64,000 nucleotides of DNA, from IMG/VR virus record IMGVR_UViG_3300027708_000012, positions 124,001-188,000 of that record; one strand, written 5' to 3'. The notes below the pieces were generated by a model, which saw nothing but the letters and a program-made list of their open reading frames with translations, did not search any database and had not been told where the DNA came from. This document shows positions 40,846 to 49,149 of the stretch, one piece after another; position 1 is the stretch's first letter; the number at the start of each line of letters is the position of its first letter. Both the position numbers and the translations under genes were made by a program.

Positions 40846-41097
40846 TTATTTTCTTATCCATACAAAATAATATGGGTCAAATGCCCAACCTTCTGGCGGA
40901 TTTAATGGGTCAAATCTTTCTGGATTAACATAAGGAGTTATTGGATTACTAAACCACTCTGTATACCTACGTGTTATTTCTTCTCTATCGCGATCGCTAG
41001 TATACTCATGGGCCATACGGCCTTCGGTTATGGTTTCGTATTCTCCGCCGAACCACATCCAAGGCCATATTCCATGAGTAAAAAACTTTTTAATCAT
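40846..41097 (-). CDS. Hypothetical protein
   Basis: 83 aa ORF. Confidence 0.5.
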   Translation of the reverse strand: MIKKFFTHGIWPWMWFGGEYETITEGRMAHEYTSDRDREEITRRYTEWFSNPITPYVNPERFDPLNPPEGWAFDPYYFVWIRK

Positions 41098-42259
41098 TGT
41101 CTATCTCAGGTTTGTAAAACACTCGAGCCATTGGCACAGCACTTACAGTGCTAATTAAACTCATAATCACTACGGCAGCAAACATATTAACACTAATAAC
41201 GTTGGCTGTCAACAGCATAGTAACCAAGAAGATTTCCATCAGGCCTTTGTTTTGTAGCAAAGCAGTTTTGAAACAAACAACTCTGAGTCCTTGGTCCTTA
41301 TAAGCTAACCAAACACCGACAAACTTAGTCCCAACAGCAATGATATACATAGCAATGGCACCTAGTAGAATAGTTTCAAAATCTAAAGTCCAATTAGTCT
41401 TTAAACCAGACCAGATAAAGAACACAGGCATTAACCAAACCATTTGCTGTTCGGCCATTCCTTCATTCCATTTAATAGTATCTCGTGGAGTAATCATACC
41501 TGCTAAGAACGCACCTAATACATAGTGTAATCCCGCCCAATGACTAAATGCCGCCATAGTCAATACCATAGCAACTGTTAAATTAGCATACGATTTTTCG
41601 CCGGCAAGCTCTAAAACCTTAGGCCAAACAAAATACAATACTGATAATACTGCAAAGAATATAGCCGAGTAGATAGCATACTTGCCCATACTAACAATAA
41701 CAGCTACAGTTAGCCATAGAACTAAATCGTCAAAGGTAACTAAGGCCAGTAGCTTACGACCCATGTTACTAGGCCACATACCAATTTCTTTACAAGCAAT
41801 AACCAGCATTGGCATAGCTGTAATACAAGTGGCTACACCCATGCCCCAAGCATATTGCCAGAATGGTCGTTCTGTAGTATGCCAAACAGGATTATCAAAG
41901 AACAATAAAAAACTACAGCCTGCTAATAAGATAGGAACAATAATAACTTGGAATGATTGTATCCAAATACTATTACCTTCTTGTGCTATAACTTCTTTAG
42001 GTTTAAGTTCGATACCGGCAATAAAAGCAAAGATTGTAATTGCTAAAATTTGAATAGCATCTAACCCTGTCTTAATCGGCGCAGTAAAAACTGTGCTAAA
42101 CAGCTCTGGATAAAACTGCCCTAGCGCACTAGGCCCAAGGCAAATGCCAAAGGCAATTTGCGCCATTGGCAACGGAATCCACTTTTCCATTCGTGTAATT
42201 TTTAATAGTAGCCACGGTATAAACACCATAGCGGCTATAATAAACAATAAATTACCCAT
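41090..42259 (-). CDS. Cation/H+ antiporter (CPA2, membrane domain only)
   Basis: About 12 hydrophobic segments, with GICLGPS, FIAGIE, FDD, LGAFLAG and PVFF..SG. Confidence 0.85.
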   Translation of the reverse strand: MGNLLFIIAAMVFIPWLLLKITRMEKWIPLPMAQIAFGICLGPSALGQFYPELFSTVFTAPIKTGLDAIQILAITIFAFIAGIELKPKEVIAQEGNSIWIQSFQVIIVPILLAGCSFLLFFDNPVWHTTERPFWQYAWGMGVATCITAMPMLVIACKEIGMWPSNMGRKLLALVTFDDLVLWLTVAVIVSMGKYAIYSAIFFAVLSVLYFVWPKVLELAGEKSYANLTVAMVLTMAAFSHWAGLHYVLGAFLAGMITPRDTIKWNEGMAEQQMVWLMPVFFIWSGLKTNWTLDFETILLGAIAMYIIAVGTKFVGVWLAYKDQGLRVVCFKTALLQNKGLMEIFLVTMLLTANVISVNMFAAVVIMSLISTVSAVPMARVFYKPEIDND

Positions 42260-43185: not shown

Positions 43186-43214
43186 ATTATATAGGTTTTT
43201 TTAGACAATGTCAA
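43186..43214 (-). promoter_or_regulatory. Consensus sigma70 promoter
   Basis: TTGACA-17 nt-TATAAT. Confidence 0.85.
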
Positions 43215-43984
43215 GGATTTTTCCTTACCTTTTTGTTATACTTTATTGCCGTTTCTAATATAGATAGATTAACATCTAATCTGTTTCCATAACGTATAAA
43301 TGCTGTTGTGTCTTTGGGAAAGCATGCTCCGCCAAAGCCTCGTTGATCATCAGGCCCAGGTACTTGCATATGACTATGGCCGATTCGATTGTCGTATGAT
43401 AGTACTTGCCGAATTACATCAAAGTCTGCACCGTTCTGCTCGCATATGTCATATAGCTGATTAAAAAACGATACTTTCAAACTTAAAAAACAATTAGTGG
43501 CATATTTGATTGTACTAGCTTCTGCAAATGTAGTGTTTAAAAATGATTTACAATTAGGCAACGATTCTTCAAACATTGTTTGCCACATTTTTCCAGGATC
43601 TTCTCCTCCTAGAATCATATACTTTTGATTGGCAAAATCTTCGTTAGCACTGGCCGATCGTAGAAATTCTGGACTGTAACAAATATCGTGATCTTGATAA
43701 TTATCAGCCAACTCTTCTAAGTAGTCAGGCGGTACTGTCGATTTTATCAAAACAGGTACACCATACGGTAAGTTATTCAAGACTGATTCTATCTGTCTAG
43801 TATCACAATCACCGTCGGTTGTACCAGGTGTTCCAACACAAATAATAACTCCGTCAGGATTAGGAAAATCACCTAATGTCGAAGTTGAGAATCTTGGATC
43901 CACAATATGTAGTTCGTTTTGATCTTTTAATGAATTTGCTACAGCCTTGCCTACAAAACCGTAACCTGCAATTATAATTTTCAT
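43211..43984 (-). CDS. ugd: UDP-glucose/GDP-mannose dehydrogenase family protein (lacks C-terminal domain)
   Basis: GYGFVG, CVGTP, IKSTVPP, SPEFLR, KY..N.FL..KVSFFN and GFGGACFPKD. Confidence 0.85.
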   Translation of the reverse strand: MKIIIAGYGFVGKAVANSLKDQNELHIVDPRFSTSTLGDFPNPDGVIICVGTPGTTDGDCDTRQIESVLNNLPYGVPVLIKSTVPPDYLEELADNYQDHDICYSPEFLRSASANEDFANQKYMILGGEDPGKMWQTMFEESLPNCKSFLNTTFAEASTIKYATNCFLSLKVSFFNQLYDICEQNGADFDVIRQVLSYDNRIGHSHMQVPGPDDQRGFGGACFPKDTTAFIRYGNRLDVNLSILETAIKYNKKVRKNP

Positions 43985-43985
43985 A

Positions 43986-46655
43986 TTAAAACTCGAACAA
44001 TGAATTGAATGTATTTTTTTCTTCAGTACTATTGATATCCCAGTTCAGTACTCCGATCAAGTTATCTAACTTATTATCAATAATAGTCTGTTCCATCTCA
44101 GCATGATCAAAAGGCAATTCTTTAAACCACTGTGGCAAACGTAACTCATCTACAGGATATGCAACCGATGTAAATCCTAATGGATTAGGTTTGAGTTTAC
44201 ACACAATAACTTTAGCACCGTCTGTGATAGCCATGCTGTACTTGTCATTGTACATGCGTTTCAATGTATTCCAATTAATACTTGCACGTACATGTCCTGG
44301 CATATTGGCTTTACCCTGCTTGGCTTCCTTGGCTTGGTAGTCAGTAATGTTGTTAGCACGTTTAGGAGATCCCTTCTCCCAGCCTGGCCTAACTTTGAAT
44401 CTGATACGAAATTCACTAATCATATCTAGGACTTCTTGTTCAGGCTTGCCCATTAGAACCATTTCAAGAACATCGCTTAAAAAGTTCTGAATGAATTCTG
44501 GAGTATCACTACGTTTCAAGTCCAAGCCCATGGCCTTTATCTTACCTGGCTTGCCGTCTACGTCTGTACGCTTGCCTTCTTTATCATAGTAAAGAACAGC
44601 ATAACGTTTTTTGGTAATGAACAAACTCTTAGAGCCAACAATTTCACGACCTGCTTTAATAACTTCTCCACGAGATTTGGGACAATGAAATGTATTCAAC
44701 ATAAACTGAGGAAATGTGCTATTAACTTCTTCGGCTATTTGATCATACAACTGTATCACAGTCTCTTTACTCCACGGAATTAATCCCGCTTCGATGTCCT
44801 TCTGTAAAGTGCGAAAAGCACTAAAATAACAAGAATCAGTGTCACCATATATAATTGCCTTTCCTCTATAATCATACTCGCCGGCTACAATCTCATTGAC
44901 CTTACCAGCCATGTGTCTAACAATCTGACGACCAGTTAGTGTAGTTGATTGTCCGATACGCTTATCAAAGAATCTACAACCACTGTTAAGAATAGCACCA
45001 TACAAACTGTTCAAGTTAATCTTTTTAACTAACTGTCGCTTGTCCCAGTATTCTTCTTCAACTTTATTGCCAGCTTTAATTGCTTCTTTTAATTTGGCCT
45101 GCATTTCCTTACGTTCAGCATACCAACGTTTTAGCAAGCCGGGGATAATACCTTCTTTCTCATATGTAAAGATTGTGCCATTAGCACTAAGCATCCACGG
45201 CTGATTACTTTCGTATATAAGTCTATAGACTTCTGCAGCACTTAATACGTCAGTATCTCCATTTTCCCAATCAATAGTAATATCAGTTCCAATCTCCTGA
45301 TCCATTACAGTCGTATACTCTAAAGATCCAAAAATACCTTCCCACGCAGCCGCAAAACTCTTGCCTTTAGCCATTTGTAGTTCGATAAATTCTTCTGTTT
45401 TAGTTTGACGTAACTGTCCAACAATAGTTTCTGGCCCCATGTTAAGCGCACGAATGGCCGAAGGGTACAGACTGTTAATGTCTAGTGATCCAATCCAATC
45501 GTGAATGCCTTCTTTAGGATATGCGACATACGCACCAGCAGCCGCAGTATTTTCATCCCTGTCATCTTTCTTAATACGATTAGGAACCTGAAAACCTCTG
45601 CGATGACTTTCGTTAATAATGGCCTGCTCTGTTACAGCTACAGCACCCATTGTTGTTTGTAGTAATACTGTATTTTCATGAGCAAGTGTATTTGCAATAT
45701 CTAGAAACTTTAATTTTTTATCAAGTCTATCTAGTAGCGAAGTATCTTGTCTGTTATATTCAATAAATGTTTTAAAGTCATTGTTATATAATTGATCAAG
45801 TGTACCTTCATATTGAGTTTTACGCTCACCGAGTTCGTACTCGGCAATGGCATCTAATCGATAGCTATGACGTTCTTCATATGTGTACTTACGATACAAT
45901 TCAAGACTATCTAAATGTACTCGTCCAATAAAATCGTATGTTACTGACTGTCTACCAAACTTTTCATATTCTCGGCGTTTCGGATATTGATCAAATAGAC
46001 AAAAACGTCTTGTGTCATCTTTACTTAAGACTTTAGTTACTCTATGAACTGTATACGGAACGTCGTAGCCTTCACTGTTCCAACCAGTTAATATGTCTGC
46101 ATCTTGAATAAGATCAAGAAATGCATCCAACATCTCTGCTTCTGTTTTAAACAGCATTGTATTAGGAAACTCTTTGATAGCCTCGTGTGCTTGTTCCCAA
46201 GTTAATGTTTTTGGAGGTACTGCAAAACATACAAGTGTTTCCAACCATTGTAGGTGAACTGCAATCGAAGTAATTGGCATAAAAGCATCTTCTGGAGTGC
46301 TGTAGCCACGTTCCGGATCAAAGTCCACCTCAATGTCAAAAAATGCTACATTTAGCTTAGGAGCATCTTGATTAAGATAGTGTTCACTTAATGTTACAAA
46401 GATTGGATTGATATCGCTTTCAAACAATTCTTTGCCGCTATTAATGGCTTGTTCTTTGCGTAGTTCTTTTGTGTTCTTACAGACAATACGTGTTAACGCA
46501 TCTCCGTATATTGATTGAAATTTGCCGCGTGGGTCTTTGACGTAAAACGTGTGCTTGACAGGAATGTCACGAAACTCACGTTCACCTTTCTTATTACGTT
46601 CAACTACTTTAACGATATCGTTCTCGCGGTCAAACCATGCGTCTACATAAGACAT
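43986..46655 (-). CDS. Family B DNA polymerase
   Basis: Exonuclease motifs DIE and GWNSEGYD; polymerase motifs DINSLYPS, K..LNSLYG, YGDTDS and KKRY. Confidence 0.97.
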   Translation of the reverse strand: MSYVDAWFDRENDIVKVVERNKKGEREFRDIPVKHTFYVKDPRGKFQSIYGDALTRIVCKNTKELRKEQAINSGKELFESDINPIFVTLSEHYLNQDAPKLNVAFFDIEVDFDPERGYSTPEDAFMPITSIAVHLQWLETLVCFAVPPKTLTWEQAHEAIKEFPNTMLFKTEAEMLDAFLDLIQDADILTGWNSEGYDVPYTVHRVTKVLSKDDTRRFCLFDQYPKRREYEKFGRQSVTYDFIGRVHLDSLELYRKYTYEERHSYRLDAIAEYELGERKTQYEGTLDQLYNNDFKTFIEYNRQDTSLLDRLDKKLKFLDIANTLAHENTVLLQTTMGAVAVTEQAIINESHRRGFQVPNRIKKDDRDENTAAAGAYVAYPKEGIHDWIGSLDINSLYPSAIRALNMGPETIVGQLRQTKTEEFIELQMAKGKSFAAAWEGIFGSLEYTTVMDQEIGTDITIDWENGDTDVLSAAEVYRLIYESNQPWMLSANGTIFTYEKEGIIPGLLKRWYAERKEMQAKLKEAIKAGNKVEEEYWDKRQLVKKINLNSLYGAILNSGCRFFDKRIGQSTTLTGRQIVRHMAGKVNEIVAGEYDYRGKAIIYGDTDSCYFSAFRTLQKDIEAGLIPWSKETVIQLYDQIAEEVNSTFPQFMLNTFHCPKSRGEVIKAGREIVGSKSLFITKKRYAVLYYDKEGKRTDVDGKPGKIKAMGLDLKRSDTPEFIQNFLSDVLEMVLMGKPEQEVLDMISEFRIRFKVRPGWEKGSPKRANNITDYQAKEAKQGKANMPGHVRASINWNTLKRMYNDKYSMAITDGAKVIVCKLKPNPLGFTSVAYPVDELRLPQWFKELPFDHAEMEQTIIDNKLDNLIGVLNWDINSTEEKNTFNSLFEF

Positions 46656-46669
46656 ATATTCTTTTCTCC

Positions 46670-46716
46670 TTTGTCATTTGAGGCTGACAAATACCTTCAT
46701 GCAATTTATGGCTTGC
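46670..46716 (-). promoter_or_regulatory. Tandem RNA hairpins abutting the polB Shine-Dalgarno (putative translational operator)
   Basis: On the minus strand: GCAA-GCCATAAA-TTGC and TTTGTCA-GCCTCAAA-TGACAAA, followed directly by GGAG. Confidence 0.55.
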
Positions 46717-46738
46717 TAACCTTTCTCTTTATTACTTA

Positions 46739-46996
46739 TTAGATACGTTTAGTAATATCTAAAATAGCTTCAATTTCTGCCCAATCTTCGTTATGAGCCG
46801 ACCAATCACCTTTGTGTGCAATCTTAATTGCACGATTAATAATGCTTGGTTTAATTTGCAATTCTTCTGCAACTGCTTTAACTGTTTCTTTTAAGCCTAC
46901 TGTTAAATCTTCAACTTCACGTAGTACTGTACTACCTTCGGAAATTAATCTTTCCAACTTTGCCTTTTCTTCTGGACCATATGAACGACCTGACAT
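46739..46996 (-). CDS. T4 DsbA-like dsDNA-binding protein
   Basis: 85 aa helical protein, 'LKETVKAVAEELQIKPSIINRAIKIAHK', immediately upstream of polB. Confidence 0.55.
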   Translation of the reverse strand: MSGRSYGPEEKAKLERLISEGSTVLREVEDLTVGLKETVKAVAEELQIKPSIINRAIKIAHKGDWSAHNEDWAEIEAILDITKRI

Positions 46997-47019
46997 GCTA
47001 TCTCCTAATGTATATGCCT

Positions 47020-47048
47020 ATTATATATTACTTATCTTATAAATGCAA
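47020..47048 (-). promoter_or_regulatory. Sigma70-like promoter
   Basis: TTGCAT-17 nt-TATAAT. Confidence 0.65.
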
Positions 47049-47069
47049 GCTCTAAAAAATTTTAGAGGT

Positions 47070-47096
47070 GAAAATGGCAGAAATTAATCTGCCATT
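47070..47096 (-). terminator. Probable intrinsic terminator
   Basis: 9-bp stem AATGGCAGA/TCTGCCATT immediately after the stop at 47101, with a short U-run. Confidence 0.55.
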
Positions 47097-47100
47097 ATAA

Positions 47101-49149
47101 TTAACCGCGAGCTATTTTCAACCAACGATCCAATTCGTCATTGTTTTCTTTTACTGGTTTGATATCTGCCAGGATCTCAGCTAGTTTGCTAGGATCTACA
47201 CCAGCAACTTGGAATGTACCAAACAATTGTTTCTTTTCTATAGGAACAACTTTTAATCCTGCGGCTGCGAGCGTATCAAAGAATGGTTTTTCCTGTCCTG
47301 ATGTAACCCATTTGTACGGGAATTCTTTTACGGCACCACCGCCACCAAACGGATCACCTTCACCTCCGCTAAGATCTCGATATTTGATAATACCGTCTTT
47401 AGGATCAATAAAGTTTCCACTGCCTTGTGGAGTAGTCATTTTTCTAACTTGCCCACGAGCCGATGCTATAGCGTCATCTTGTTTGAATTTATCGTAATCT
47501 GCGCGAGCTGTATTGCCTGACGGCATTGCGGCAATATTATTTGGCCTAGGTTTATTGGCATTCATTGCCAATGCACTAGCTGCACCGGATGCATGACCTC
47601 TATCAGTTGCTAATTGCAATGCACTTGCACCTTCGGCACGATCTAATACTTCTTGAGCATGACTTACAGCAGCGTCCCACTTTTGATCTTCGCCGTAATC
47701 GTGACCCATTATTTCACGAATTTGTGCAATTAATGCTTTTTGATCAGCTGTTAATTCTGGTTTTGTGTCTGGTTTTGTGTCTGGTTTTGTGTCTGGTGTC
47801 GGATCGTCATGCGGCATTGGTGCAATAACATTCGGCGCAACTGGATTATTCGGTGTTGGTTGCGGTTCTGGTTTATCACTTCCTGGCGTTAATGCCAACC
47901 CTGCTCCAGTACCTAACGCTGCTCCAGCTAGTGCTGTCTTTACTGGATTTCGACCAACAACTTGACCTGCTTTAAATGCAGAACTTGGCCCTTTATATTT
48001 TACATTTTTTGCAAGACCTACATTGGGTAACGGAGTTACATTAGGACTTGCGGCACCTTTAGTAAAGTTTTTAACACCCTTCCAAGCATCTTTACCTAAT
48101 TCAATTCCTTTACCAAGTAGTTCGCTTGCTGCACCTTCGTCTGCATGTTGTTCAGCTTCAATCATTGCCAAACGATCTCGTAAACTTGCAATATTTTCTG
48201 CTACAGTTTCAGATGTTACTCCGTATTTTTGCATAGCCGCCTGAGTCTTTGGACCCATTTTGCCATCTGCAGTAATTTGTGCGCCTTTAGCAATTAACTT
48301 TTGTTGTATAGCAAATACTTTAGGATCACCGCCAGGTGGCATTGTTGTACCAGCCGGAGCGGCTGCTACAGTTGCTGGTTGACCGGCAGGCGCAGTACCG
48401 TCAAATTCACCGTGCTTGTAATCGCGAGCTAGGTTAGCGGCATCTAATCCTAATGATGCGGCAGTACCAATACCTGGAACTAATGATGCTAAACCACTTG
48501 CGCCAGCCATACCAGCGCCAACCCAGTCACCTTTTTTAGCGCGGTTATATGCATCAGCGGCACCAAATGCTAAACCAACACCTGGAATAGCCTTGCCTAA
48601 CATTTTACCAACGCCTTTTGCAGCTCCGTAAGTCCCAGCGCCAACTGCTGCTTGCTGTGCTAGACTTGCTTCAGATTCTGTTTGATAACCAAAACTTTCC
48701 ATCAATGCATTGGCAATATCAAAAGAAACACCCTCTTTTAAGGTTTTTTCCAATTGATCCACTAGTGCATTTAATTTTGCAATATCTGCATCTTCTAAAG
48801 CATCGTTGCCTTTTGGCGGCTTGTTTGTGGTGCCTGTTGGTGTTGGAGCAATATTAGCTGTAGGTGCAGGCTGTGACGGACTATTACGTTGTGCATTCAT
48901 CTGATTGTAATATTGTTCGCGTCCGTATGACTGTCCAGGTACTATAGGCATTCCAGGTTGTGGACCACCTTGTTGTGTAGGAGTTTGATTTCCTCTGTTA
49001 GCTAGTAAAGCACCGCCGGCTGCACCTAATCCTAACATTGGTAAAAGATTTGCATTTGCTCTTGCGATCGATCCTTCAGGGTCTTGACGATAGAAATTCC
49101 CACCTTCGTCGATATTATCAATTTTGTTGAGTAAATCTCTAATGTTCAT
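47101..49149 (-). CDS. Putative internal virion/ejected protein with Gly-zipper hydrophobic helices and a peptidoglycan-binding-like domain
   Basis: PGBD-like 'VFAIQQKL...ADGKMGPKTQAAM'. Several GxxxG hydrophobic stretches. N-terminus MNIRDLL, C-terminus ELDRWLKIARG. Confidence 0.6.
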   Translation of the reverse strand: MNIRDLLNKIDNIDEGGNFYRQDPEGSIARANANLLPMLGLGAAGGALLANRGNQTPTQQGGPQPGMPIVPGQSYGREQYYNQMNAQRNSPSQPAPTANIAPTPTGTTNKPPKGNDALEDADIAKLNALVDQLEKTLKEGVSFDIANALMESFGYQTESEASLAQQAAVGAGTYGAAKGVGKMLGKAIPGVGLAFGAADAYNRAKKGDWVGAGMAGASGLASLVPGIGTAASLGLDAANLARDYKHGEFDGTAPAGQPATVAAAPAGTTMPPGGDPKVFAIQQKLIAKGAQITADGKMGPKTQAAMQKYGVTSETVAENIASLRDRLAMIEAEQHADEGAASELLGKGIELGKDAWKGVKNFTKGAASPNVTPLPNVGLAKNVKYKGPSSAFKAGQVVGRNPVKTALAGAALGTGAGLALTPGSDKPEPQPTPNNPVAPNVIAPMPHDDPTPDTKPDTKPDTKPELTADQKALIAQIREIMGHDYGEDQKWDAAVSHAQEVLDRAEGASALQLATDRGHASGAASALAMNANKPRPNNIAAMPSGNTARADYDKFKQDDAIASARGQVRKMTTPQGSGNFIDPKDGIIKYRDLSGGEGDPFGGGGAVKEFPYKWVTSGQEKPFFDTLAAAGLKVVPIEKKQLFGTFQVAGVDPSKLAEILADIKPVKENNDELDRWLKIARG
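47756..47796. repeat. 12-bp tandem repeat x3 (encodes PDTK)
   Basis: tctggttttgtg x3 followed by tctgg. Confidence 0.9.

What the first reader, a model, noticed from the sequence alone, without database searches (positions are those of the whole stretch)
46656..46730. Tandem 8-nt-loop hairpins at the polB ribosome-binding site: candidate autogenous translational operator
Seen (mRNA sense): AAGGU-UA-GCAA[GCCAUAAA]UUGC, then AAGGU-A-UUUGUCA[GCCUCAAA]UGACAAA, directly followed by GGAG and the start codon. The two stems differ in sequence, while both loops are 8 nt of the form GCCnnAAA and both are preceded by AAGGU. Established: T4 DNA polymerase represses its own translation by binding a hairpin with an 8-nt loop just upstream of its SD. 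Inference: a duplicated operator bound by this polymerase or another phage RNA-binding protein.
Basis: partly seen in the sequence, partly recalled or inferred. Interest (0 to 1): 0.6.

Follow-up and report, generated by a model that had tools for sequence, protein, structure and literature searches.

The report
Tandem pseudoknot leader of phage polB
The short mRNA leader in front of this jumbo phage's DNA polymerase gene most likely folds into two similar mini-pseudoknots beside the ribosome-binding site; related uncultured phages keep them through compensating mutations, and they are probably a switch by which the polymerase limits its own synthesis.

Summary
Window 46672-46721 (- strand) holds two hairpins with 8-nt loops (GCCAUAAA, GCCUCAAA). 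Each is preceded by GGU. The second ends 2 nt before GGAG, which lies 10 nt before the polB AUG.

A single-sequence fold is unremarkable, but the comparative signal is strong. About 200 distinct polB leaders from IMG/VR keep both hairpins with many compensatory changes. The model finds one copy per genome, always at polB or at the head of its operon. It is absent from Rfam, from bacterial genomes and from cultured relatives.

They are most likely pairing partners. GGU:GCC changes to AGU:GCU together, with no uncompensated form found, and the helix takes many other paired forms in a sister clade. Each unit is therefore an H-type pseudoknot with an A-rich third loop.

Function is inferred, not shown. 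The element is specific to polB and abuts the SD, and T4 offers precedents in gp43 and gp32. Autogenous translational repression by the polymerase is therefore the leading model (about 0.45). The element is not homologous to the T4 gene 43 operator. Rivals are a factor-independent stabiliser or enhancer, another protein, and a riboswitch.

The parts
46719..46721 (-). Unit A, S1 5' strand (GGU), proposed to pair with the first three loop bases
   Evidence: GGY is nearly invariant in the main clade. AGU occurs with a GCU loop in L109 and L169, and the helix takes many other paired forms in the sister clade.
46701..46716 (-). Unit A hairpin: stem GCAA/UUGC with the 8-nt loop GCCAUAAA. GCC (46712-46710) is the S1 3' strand and AUAAA is the A-rich loop 3.
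   Evidence: All 4 stem pairs show compensatory changes. Cells are 100% paired in A1, 91.9% in A2 and 98.5% in A4.
46696..46700 (-). Linker AUGAA between the two units
   Evidence: Variable in sequence, and 3-8 nt long in the 115 leaders aligned in A2.
46693..46695 (-). Unit B, S1 5' strand (GGU)
   Evidence: In A4 the pair at columns 56:71 is G-C in 63 rows, A-U in 13, G-U in 2 and unpaired in none. No uncompensated variant was found in the IMG/VR scans.
46672..46692 (-). Unit B: loop 1 (AUU), stem UGUCA/UGACA (7 bp in this phage) and the 8-nt loop GCCUCAAA. GCC (46684-46682) is the S1 3' strand and UCAAA is loop 3.
   Evidence: The two middle stem pairs occur as UC/GA, CA/UG, UG/CA, CG/CG, AG/CU, CC/GG and UA/UA.
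46666..46669 (-). Shine-Dalgarno GGAG, 2 nt 3' of unit B
   Evidence: GGAG is present in 123 of 128 distinct main-clade leaders, always 1-5 nt from the 3' end of unit B.
43986..46655 (-). polB: T4 gp43-like family-B DNA polymerase, 889 aa. This is the regulated gene.
   Evidence: Pfam DNA_pol_B 3.7e-38 and DNA_pol_B_exo1 1.2e-17. The best cultured relatives are Phosso at 49% and Atu_ph07 at 45% identity.
46739..46996 (-). Upstream 85-aa ORF, a DsbA-like double-stranded-DNA-binding protein. It is context, not part of the element.
   Evidence: phrog_12534 and phrog_639. Homologues are annotated DsbA or DNA-binding protein. It lies upstream of only 81 of 140 main-clade leaders and of no sister-clade leader.
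47094..47121 (-). Sigma-70-like promoter (TTGAAA, 16 nt, TATAAT) upstream of the 85-aa ORF. It is the likely source of a dsbA-like/polB transcript in this phage.
   Evidence: The consensus scan matches 11 of 12 positions, and no terminator-like site lies between it and polB.

Best explanation
The 5' leader of the polB mRNA folds into two tandem H-type mini-pseudoknots of about 21-24 nt each. In each unit a 3-bp helix (GGU:GCC) stacks on a 4-7-bp helix. An A-rich loop 3, ending in an invariant AA followed by a variable base (mostly A or G; A, U or G in unit A), probably lies in the minor groove of the short helix.

The second pseudoknot ends 1-5 nt before the Shine-Dalgarno sequence, which itself stays unpaired. 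The most likely function is an autogenous translational operator. When the phage DNA polymerase is not engaged on primer-template DNA, it would bind the structured leader and sterically block 30S binding at the adjacent SD. This is what T4, RB69 and RB49 gp43 do at a hairpin operator and what T4 gp32 does at a pseudoknot.

Shown here: the structure, its conservation, its single-copy restriction to polB and its position. Inferred: the identity of the binding factor and the direction of regulation.
For: Structure:
- Hairpin covariation in three alignments.
- Pseudoknot pair G:C changes to A:U jointly in unit B. In sets found through the protein the counts are GGU+GCC 42, AGU+GCU 10, GGC+GCC 1, AGC+GCU 1 and no mixed forms.
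- A complete IMG/VR scan for GGU with a non-C third loop base found 0 polB leaders.
- A scan for a non-G first base found 5 polB leaders, all AGU+GCU.
- Sister-clade S1 helices are GAGU:ACUU, AGGU:ACCU, GGGU:ACCC, GAGU:ACUC, UGUC:GACA, AGUC:GACU, GGUC:GACC and GAGY:GCUC. Own pairing of 4 bp or more occurs in 62% against 21% in swapped controls.
- An invariant U.G pair and scattered G.U pairs place the structure on the polB sense strand.

Specificity:
- One model hit in the 345-kb genome (E 1e-19; the next is E 6.6).
- One strong hit in each of 5 other large relatives, 199-372 kb, two of them complete genomes.
- 113 of 120 IMG/VR pattern hits are followed directly by the polB N-terminus.
- The leader tracks polB rather than the upstream gene.
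- In bacterial genomes the same pattern shows only chance complementarity, 17 of 120.

Position: 1-5 nt from the SD and 10-15 nt from the start in 128 leaders, with weak UUG starts in 22 of them.

Precedent: gp43 and gp32 autoregulation. T4 and RB69 loops carry UAAC, RB49 carries UAAA, and the 3' AC/AA loop bases matter (PMC3014915). Unit A's loop contains AUAAA.

No RegA homologue was found in this genome, with T4 as a positive control.
Against: - There is no binding or expression evidence of any kind.
- The element is not homologous to the T4 operator. The review states there is no evidence that the T4 gene 43 operator forms a pseudoknot.
- Because S1 covaries and loop 1 differs between clades, most of the 'conserved loop sequence' is explained by folding alone. 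It does not by itself argue for sequence-specific protein recognition.
- The review also notes that some T4-related gp43 proteins do not autoregulate.
- Close relatives manage without the leader. One subclade has TATAAT 5-6 nt before the ATG and no SD.
- On the tree, the unit-B G-C/A-U switch amounts to only 3 independent events, with a sign test p of 0.25.
Confidence: 0.45

Rival explanations
1. A factor-independent cis element. The tandem pseudoknots would protect the mRNA 5' end or region from RNase E or 5'-end-dependent decay. Alternatively they would act as a structured standby or enhancer platform, for example by recruiting ribosomal protein S1, that keeps the adjacent SD open. No dedicated repressor would be involved.
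For: What is conserved is the fold rather than the sequence: S1 covaries and loop 1 differs between clades. The SD is never part of a helix. In many relatives an extended -10 box (TGNTATAAT) lies 5-7 nt before unit A, so the pseudoknot would be 5'-terminal. From my own knowledge, not tested here: SELEX ligands of S1 are pseudoknots.
Against: A general stabiliser or enhancer would be expected at several genes. It occurs once per genome and only at polB. In the window's phage the leader probably lies inside a dsbA-like/polB transcript rather than at its 5' end.
Confidence: 0.2
2. An operator for a different trans-acting protein, from the phage or the host. This might be a dimer that reads the two similar units, as ThrRS reads the two anticodon-like arms of the thrS operator.
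For: Two near-identical units suggest two equivalent binding sites. The genome holds many ORFs of unknown function.
Against: No RegA homologue was found. The adjacent DsbA-like gene is not linked to the leader: it is upstream in 81 of 140 main-clade loci and absent from the sister clade. CsrA-type recognition (GGA in loops) is excluded because GG changes to AG with compensation. A regulator acting on a single target other than its own gene is uncommon.
Confidence: 0.15
3. Tandem ligand-sensing aptamers: a new small pseudoknot riboswitch class that ties polymerase translation to a metabolite such as a nucleotide.
For: The element has compact H-type pseudoknots with an A-rich loop 3 next to an SD, in a tandem arrangement. 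This is the general architecture of preQ1-I or SAM-II type and tandem riboswitches.
Against: No Rfam family matches at E up to 10. Across the clades the only non-helical positions that stay conserved are the two A's of loop 3 and the base after them. Loop 1 and S1 change freely, which leaves no conserved pocket. There is no alternative SD-sequestering helix. A possible fourth S1 pair shows no covariation.
Confidence: 0.07
4. A DNA-level signal (promoter, operator, terminator or origin element), or a chance pair of inverted repeats.
For: The region is intergenic and close to promoter-like A/T-rich sequence.
Against: G.U and U.G pairs are maintained, including the invariant U.G in S1, and these would be A.C mismatches on the other strand. 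There is no T-run and no terminator call. Stem sequences change freely while complementarity is kept. In bacterial genomes the pattern shows only chance complementarity.
Confidence: 0.03

Closest known systems
Gene 43 translational operator of T4, RB69 and RB49 (autogenous repression by gp43 DNA polymerase)
   Same: It sits in the leader of a gp43-type family-B polymerase gene, upstream of and next to the SD. It has an 8-nt hairpin loop with A's towards its 3' side; the T4/RB69 loop carries UAAC, RB49 carries UAAA, and unit A here carries AUAAA. It is specific to that one gene.
   Different: T4 has one hairpin, AGCCU[AAUAACUC]GGGCU, 10 nt from the SD, with no evidence of a pseudoknot. Here there are two units, each most likely a pseudoknot, and the second lies 1-5 nt from the SD. 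There is no detectable homology: R1 gives no hit on the T4 leader. Binding is untested.
T4 gene 32 mRNA pseudoknot (autogenous repression by gp32) and the E. coli rpsO (S15) pseudoknot operator
   Same: An H-type pseudoknot in the translational operator of a gene whose product binds nucleic acid (PMC3014915).
   Different: Those have a single pseudoknot. In gene 32 it lies far upstream and nucleates cooperative binding along unstructured RNA. The gene here is different, the sequence is unrelated, and the pseudoknots are in tandem.
E. coli thrS operator (two tRNA-anticodon-like stem-loops read by dimeric ThrRS). From my own knowledge; not tested here.
   Same: Two similar stem-loops next to the SD, and repression by competition with the 30S subunit.
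   Different: The units here do not resemble tRNA arms, no aminoacyl-tRNA synthetase is involved, and family-B polymerases are not known to act as dimers.
Small H-type pseudoknot riboswitches (preQ1-I, SAM-II)
   Same: They share the size, the H-type topology, an A-rich loop 3 and proximity to the SD.
   Different: There is no Rfam match, no conserved ligand pocket, and the SD is not part of the fold.
Catalogue of 8,495 candidate structured RNAs predicted from IMG/VR (PMC10690425)
   Same: It mined the same data source and the same class of element: conserved cis-regulatory candidates within 25 nt of phage genes, including 12 upstream of gp32.
   Different: The main text does not mention polymerase genes. 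Its supplementary tables are not held, so I could not check whether this leader is already listed as an unnamed candidate.

Membership tests
T4-type gene 43 translational operator | Lies in the 5' leader of the gp43-type polymerase gene, adjacent to or overlapping the ribosome-binding site | tested here: met
   Unit B ends 1-5 nt before GGAG and 10-15 nt before the start in 128 distinct leaders. The downstream gene is DNA_pol_B.
T4-type gene 43 translational operator | Sequence or structure homology to the T4/RB69 operator: a single 5-bp hairpin with an 8-nt loop containing UAAC | tested here: not met
   The T4 leader was read directly. Model R1 gives no hit there with filters off. This element has two units, loops of the form GCCNNAAN, and pseudoknot pairing.
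T4-type gene 43 translational operator | Bound by its own polymerase, with repression of translation | not testable with these tools
   Needs EMSA, toeprinting or reporter assays.
H-type RNA pseudoknot | Hairpin-loop bases pair with a flanking strand, supported by covariation | tested here: met
   In unit B the pair is G-C in 63 rows, A-U in 13, G-U in 2 and unpaired in none. No mixed forms occur in the protein-derived sets, and no uncompensated variants appear in the IMG/VR scans. S1 helices are diverse in the sister clade. Caveat: the unit-B switch amounts to only 3 independent events on the tree.
H-type RNA pseudoknot | Loop lengths compatible with coaxial stacking: loop 1 of 1-3 nt across the deep groove, no loop 2, and an A-rich loop 3 across the minor groove of S1 | tested here: met
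   Loop 1 is UA or AUU. S1b starts at the first loop base. Loop 3 is 5 nt, ending in an invariant AA followed by a variable base. The geometry is inferred from sequence, not modelled.
Known Rfam families, including riboswitches | Match to a curated covariance model | tested here: not met
   cmscan of 46500-46900 at E up to 10 returned only a spurious snoRNA hit at 15 bits, against a gathering score of 85.
Rho-independent terminator | G+C-rich hairpin followed by a U-run | tested here: not met
   No terminator-like site in 46400-47200. The hairpins are followed by AUGAAGG and by AAGGAG.
RegA-type translational operator | A RegA repressor is encoded by the phage, and the AU-rich site at the start codon is unstructured | tested here: not met
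   PF01818 is absent from the 94%-complete genome. The T4 positive control scored 2.3e-75. The site here is structured.
CsrA/RsmA binding leader | GGA motifs presented in hairpin loops, one overlapping the SD | tested here: not met
   The GG lies 5' of the stems, not in the loops. It changes to AG together with a compensating loop change.

The most novel reading that the evidence does not exclude
The two mini-pseudoknots are ligand-binding aptamers of an undescribed tandem riboswitch class. It would couple synthesis of a phage replicative polymerase to the pool of a nucleotide or related metabolite, rather than acting as a protein operator.
Probability: 0.07. Interest if true: 0.85.

Novelty: new variant of a known kind. 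Interest (0 to 1): 0.6.

Why it matters
Autogenous translational control of a replicative DNA polymerase has been shown only for T4, RB69 and RB49, and the RNA-protein complex has never been solved.

This leader is a second, structurally different candidate operator for the same enzyme family. It is compact (about 50 nt for the two units) and duplicated. It has hundreds of natural sequence variants that already mark which positions must pair.

If the polymerase binds it, it offers a tractable system for two questions: how a family-B polymerase recognises RNA, and how jumbo phages balance replisome stoichiometry. If nothing binds it, it is a clean natural example of tandem minimal pseudoknots acting in cis next to an SD.

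Either way it is a well-supported new RNA family for Rfam-type curation, from an uncultured freshwater jumbo-phage lineage.

Tried and rejected
1. Single-sequence folding: z-scores run from -0.4 to -1.8, so thermodynamics alone does not single the region out.
2. Near-identity DNA search in GenBank phages found nothing.
3. Leaders of cultured relatives (Phosso, Atu_ph07, 2.275.O, SCTP-2, 121Q): no motif. Only the shared flanks score weakly, with E of 0.015 or worse.
4. A fourth S1 base pair in unit B of the main clade: no association, 67 paired against 62.9 expected, p about 0.26.
5. An automated hairpin-picking and swap test over all leaders mis-set loop boundaries and was too noisy. I replaced it with anchored tests.
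6. The MAFFT alignment of isolated unit-B segments (A3) shifted S1 for the variants with a 2-nt loop 1, so I did not use it for counts. The model-based alignment A4 was used instead.
7. Metatranscriptome contigs: RNA-library contigs cover the leader exactly (X9, 46629-46777) and the upstream ORF (X10, 46712-47111). Contigs at depth 2-4 cannot show transcript ends or exclude DNA carry-over.
8. The GTDB genome scan gave only chance matches and no host clue.
9. Petrov & Karam 2002 (PMC137073) and the supplements of PMC10690425 are not held.
10. Rejected readings:
- Readthrough or frameshift stimulator for the upstream ORF: there are two in-frame stops, and the distance and the upstream gene vary.
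- A uORF from the AUG in the linker: that AUG is not conserved.
- Pairing of the SD with the loop: at most 2-3 bp, and it does not explain the G-to-A/C-to-U covariation.

Full report
CONTEXT

The window is bases 124001-188000 of a 345,369-bp IMG/VR virus record estimated 94% complete. An 889-aa ORF at 43986-46655 (- strand) is a T4 gp43-type family-B DNA polymerase: DNA_pol_B scores 3.7e-38 and the exonuclease domain 1.2e-17. The nearest cultured relatives are jumbo phages at under 50% identity: Sinorhizobium phage Phosso 49%, Atu_ph07 45%, and Rak2/121Q-like phages about 43%. No near-identical DNA exists in GenBank phages.

The ORF upstream of polB (46739-46996, - strand, 85 aa) is a DsbA-like double-stranded-DNA-binding protein. 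A good sigma-70-like promoter lies upstream of that ORF (47121-47094, - strand), and no terminator-like site lies between it and polB.

THE OBSERVATION

- GGU-UA-GCAA[GCCAUAAA]UUGC
- a linker, AUGAA
- GGU-AUU-UGUCA[GCCUCAAA]UGACA, where the stem extends to 7 bp in this phage
- AA, then GGAG, a 10-nt spacer, and AUG

On its own the sequence is not thermodynamically remarkable. The hairpins fold at -3.6 and -6.1 kcal/mol, and the 60-nt and 106-nt folds have z of -0.43 and -0.51. A one-unit descriptor occurs 4 times in the genome against about 1.9 expected, and two of the four are these neighbours at the polB RBS. The case for the element therefore rests on comparison.

CONSERVATION AND HAIRPIN COVARIATION

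A protein-based search of IMG/VR found 562 polB relatives. The best 80 (87-100% amino-acid identity) were fetched. In 78 of them both hairpins lie directly upstream of polB, although the surrounding intergenic sequence diverges.
- On 56 distinct leaders, hairpin 1 is 100% paired and all four pairs show double changes. The two middle pairs of hairpin 2 show 25 double changes each.
Of these, 113 run straight into a polB N-terminus that is 58-94% identical, and 3 are chance hits. Of the remaining four, three have an extra ORF between leader and polB and one (L118) reaches the end of its locus before polB could be scored.
- The unconstrained stem positions are complementary in seven different combinations.
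- On 115 diverse leaders, 96.3% of cells pair, there are 227 double-change cells, and no shuffle or slid control comes close.
- In the GTDB bacterial and archaeal genomes the same pattern gives 120 hits, of which 17 (14%) have complementary free positions. That is what two random pairs give, and none is a polB leader.

SPECIFICITY

A covariance model of the whole leader (R1) hits the window's genome once, at 86.6 bits and E 1e-19; the next hit has E 6.6. It also gives one strong hit in each of five other large relatives of 199-372 kb, two of which are complete genomes with terminal repeats.

The model is not found in Rfam 15 or in the T4 gene 43 region. It is also absent upstream of polB in Phosso, Atu_ph07, Vibrio phage 2.275.O, SCTP-2 and 121Q. 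The DsbA-like gene lies upstream of only 81 of 140 main-clade leaders and of no sister-clade leader. The RNA therefore tracks polB, not its neighbour.

THE PSEUDOKNOT

These two features can pair: 5'-GGU-3' with 5'-GCC-3' gives G-C, G-C and U.G. That makes each unit a classical H-type pseudoknot:
- S1 of 3 bp
- loop 1 of 2-3 nt
- S2 of 4-7 bp
- no loop 2
- loop 3 of 5 nt, ending in an invariant AA followed by a variable base

Tests of this pairing:
1. In unit A of the main clade, GGY:GCC dominates. L109 and L169 carry AGU together with GCU. L056 has ACC, which keeps the pair as U-A. L011 (UCC) and L032 (UGU) are the only mismatches.
3. The reciprocal scan, which was complete, looked for GGU with a non-C third loop base. 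It found 52 stretches and no polB leader.
4. Fetching relatives of one of the AGU+GCU polymerases revealed a sister clade that R1 still recognises (E 1e-11 to 3e-3). Its S1 helices take many paired forms.
 - Unit A: GAGU:ACUU, AGAGU:ACUUU, AGGU:ACCU, GGGU:ACCC, GAGU:ACUC, UGUC:GACA, UAGUC:GACUA, UGGUC:GACCA, AAUG:CAUU and ACG:CGU.
 - Unit B: AGU:GCU, GGU:GCC, GGC:GCC, GAGU:GCUC and GAGC:GCUC.
5. In sets retrieved through the protein, and therefore unbiased for the RNA, unit B shows GGU+GCC 42, AGU+GCU 10, GGC+GCC 1, AGC+GCU 1 and no mixed combination.
6. On the model-based alignment A4, whose model contains no pseudoknot, the first S1 pair is G-C in 63 rows, A-U in 13, G-U in 2 and unpaired in none.
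7. For sister-clade unit A, with the hairpin located independently of S1, 62% of leaders can form 4 bp or more with their own 5' flank. With flanks swapped between loop classes the figure is 21%.

Caveats:
- On a polB tree of 201 sequences, the unit-B G-C/A-U switch reduces to three independent events. All three are concordant, but three are too few for a sign test (p = 0.25).
- A possible fourth pair in the main clade shows no covariation.
- For the four GAC-loop leaders only the 5' flank can supply the partner strand. This argues against pairing with the next unit's GGU or with the SD.

I put the pseudoknot fold at about 0.8. The invariant U.G pair and scattered G.U pairs also place the structure on the sense RNA strand rather than in DNA.

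POSITION RELATIVE TO TRANSLATION SIGNALS

In 128 distinct main-clade leaders the 3' end of unit B lies 1-5 nt from the SD core, which is GGAG in 123 of them, and 10-15 nt from the start codon. The start is AUG in 105 and UUG in 22. The SD is never inside a helix, and no alternative SD-sequestering pairing is conserved.

In many relatives an extended -10 box (TGNTATAAT) sits 5-7 nt before unit A, so there the RNA would begin at the first pseudoknot. In the window's own phage the nearest good promoter is upstream of the DsbA-like ORF. RNA-library contigs bridge the ORF-polB junction (X9, 46629-46777, exact match). Contigs at depth 2-4 prove neither transcription nor transcript ends.

MECHANISM

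Shown:
- a duplicated, covarying, single-copy RNA structure
- fixed to the ribosome-binding site of polB, or to the first gene of a polB operon
- present across a large uncultured jumbo-phage lineage

Inferred: what binds it.

A conserved structure that is specific to one gene and abuts an exposed SD is the signature of feedback by the gene's own product. The closest precedents are in T4 replication genes. gp43 represses its own translation at a hairpin next to the RBS when it is not engaged on DNA. gp32 does the same at a pseudoknot (PMC3014915). The T4 operator, read directly, is AGCCU[AAUAACUC]GGGCU, 10 nt before AAGGA. It shares the 8-nt loop size and an AUAA core with unit A here, but it is not homologous.

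I therefore favour autogenous repression by the polymerase, at about 0.45.

Against this model:
- Most of the sequence conservation is explained by folding alone.
- Some T4-like polymerases do not autoregulate.
- A closely related subclade dispenses with the leader altogether.

The rivals:
- A factor-independent stabiliser or enhancer (0.2). Its weakness is that the element occurs only at polB.
- Another protein (0.15). There is no RegA. The DsbA-like neighbour is not linked to the leader. CsrA-type recognition is excluded by the covariation.
- A tandem riboswitch (0.07). There is no Rfam match, and across the clades the only conserved non-helical positions are the two A's of loop 3 and the base after them.
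- A DNA signal or chance (0.03).

EXCEPTIONS THAT FIT THE PICTURE

- L093, L101, L102 and L120: a 53-63-aa cysteine-rich ORF sits between leader and polB. Its stop overlaps the polB start (AUGA), so control at the leader would pass to polB by translational coupling.
- L107, L129 and L180: a 204-aa ORF of unknown function intervenes, and polB has its own SD.
- L038 and L061: a 247-aa DUF723 and zinc-finger ORF on the opposite strand, probably a mobile endonuclease-type gene, separates an intact leader from polB by about 800 nt.

NOVELTY

The element is not in Rfam 15. The literature I could search describes no such leader for phage polymerases. A 2023 catalogue of 8,495 candidate structured RNAs from IMG/VR discusses leaders of gp32 and gp20 but not of polymerases. 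Its supplementary tables are not held, so prior listing as an unnamed candidate cannot be excluded.

I classify the element as a new variant of a known kind: a phage replication-gene translational operator with a different, tandem-pseudoknot architecture. No reads-tool refusals occurred, and read laying was given 5,301 letters.

Noticed in passing
L414-L416, L419, L421, L423-L426, L428-L438, L441, L444, L446, L448, L449, L452, L454, L455, L459 (polB start at 401): A subclade 81-83% identical in polB to the sister-clade query has no leader and no SD. A TATAAT-like hexamer lies 5-6 nt before the ATG, which suggests leaderless polB mRNAs in these phages.
   Followed up: partly
L394, L404, L410 (around 395-405): The codon aligned with the polB start is ATT (AAGGAG, 6 nt, ATT TCA TAC GTC). 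This is a probable AUU start. UUG starts occur in 22 of 128 main-clade leaders.
   Followed up: partly
L093:4836-4997 (-), L101:4643-4816 (-), L102:2042-2227 (-), L120:406-597 (-): A 53-63-aa cysteine-rich ORF (several CxxC-like pairs, no Pfam hit) is inserted between the leader and polB. Its stop overlaps the polB start (AUGA).
   Followed up: partly
L038:204-947 (-) and the equivalent region of L061: A 247-aa ORF with DUF723 and a treble-clef zinc finger lies on the opposite strand between an intact leader and polB. It looks like a mobile endonuclease-type insertion.
   Followed up: partly
window 41090-42259 (-) and 43211-43984 (-): Downstream of polB the phage carries a Na+/H+ exchanger family membrane protein (389 aa). 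It also carries a 257-aa UDP-glucose/GDP-mannose dehydrogenase-like ORF that matches only part of the N-terminal and central domains. These are unusual cargo next to a replication gene.
   Followed up: no
L118:79-170 (-): In one relative unit A is replaced by a terminator-like hairpin (GUGGUUG...CAACCAC followed by a U-run), while unit B, the SD and polB are kept.
   Followed up: no
L382, L383, L386, L406, L410, L418, L420, L422 (alignment A4): In part of the sister clade unit B (GGU/AGU-UA-4 bp-[GCYAUAAR]) is so like main-clade unit A that the model aligns it to unit A. This is consistent with the two units being duplicates of one ancestral pseudoknot.
   Followed up: partly
window 47101-49149 (-): A 682-aa ORF upstream of the dsbA-like gene has weak PHROG matches to endolysin and peptidase families (residues 167-266). 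It has no Pfam hit.
   Followed up: no
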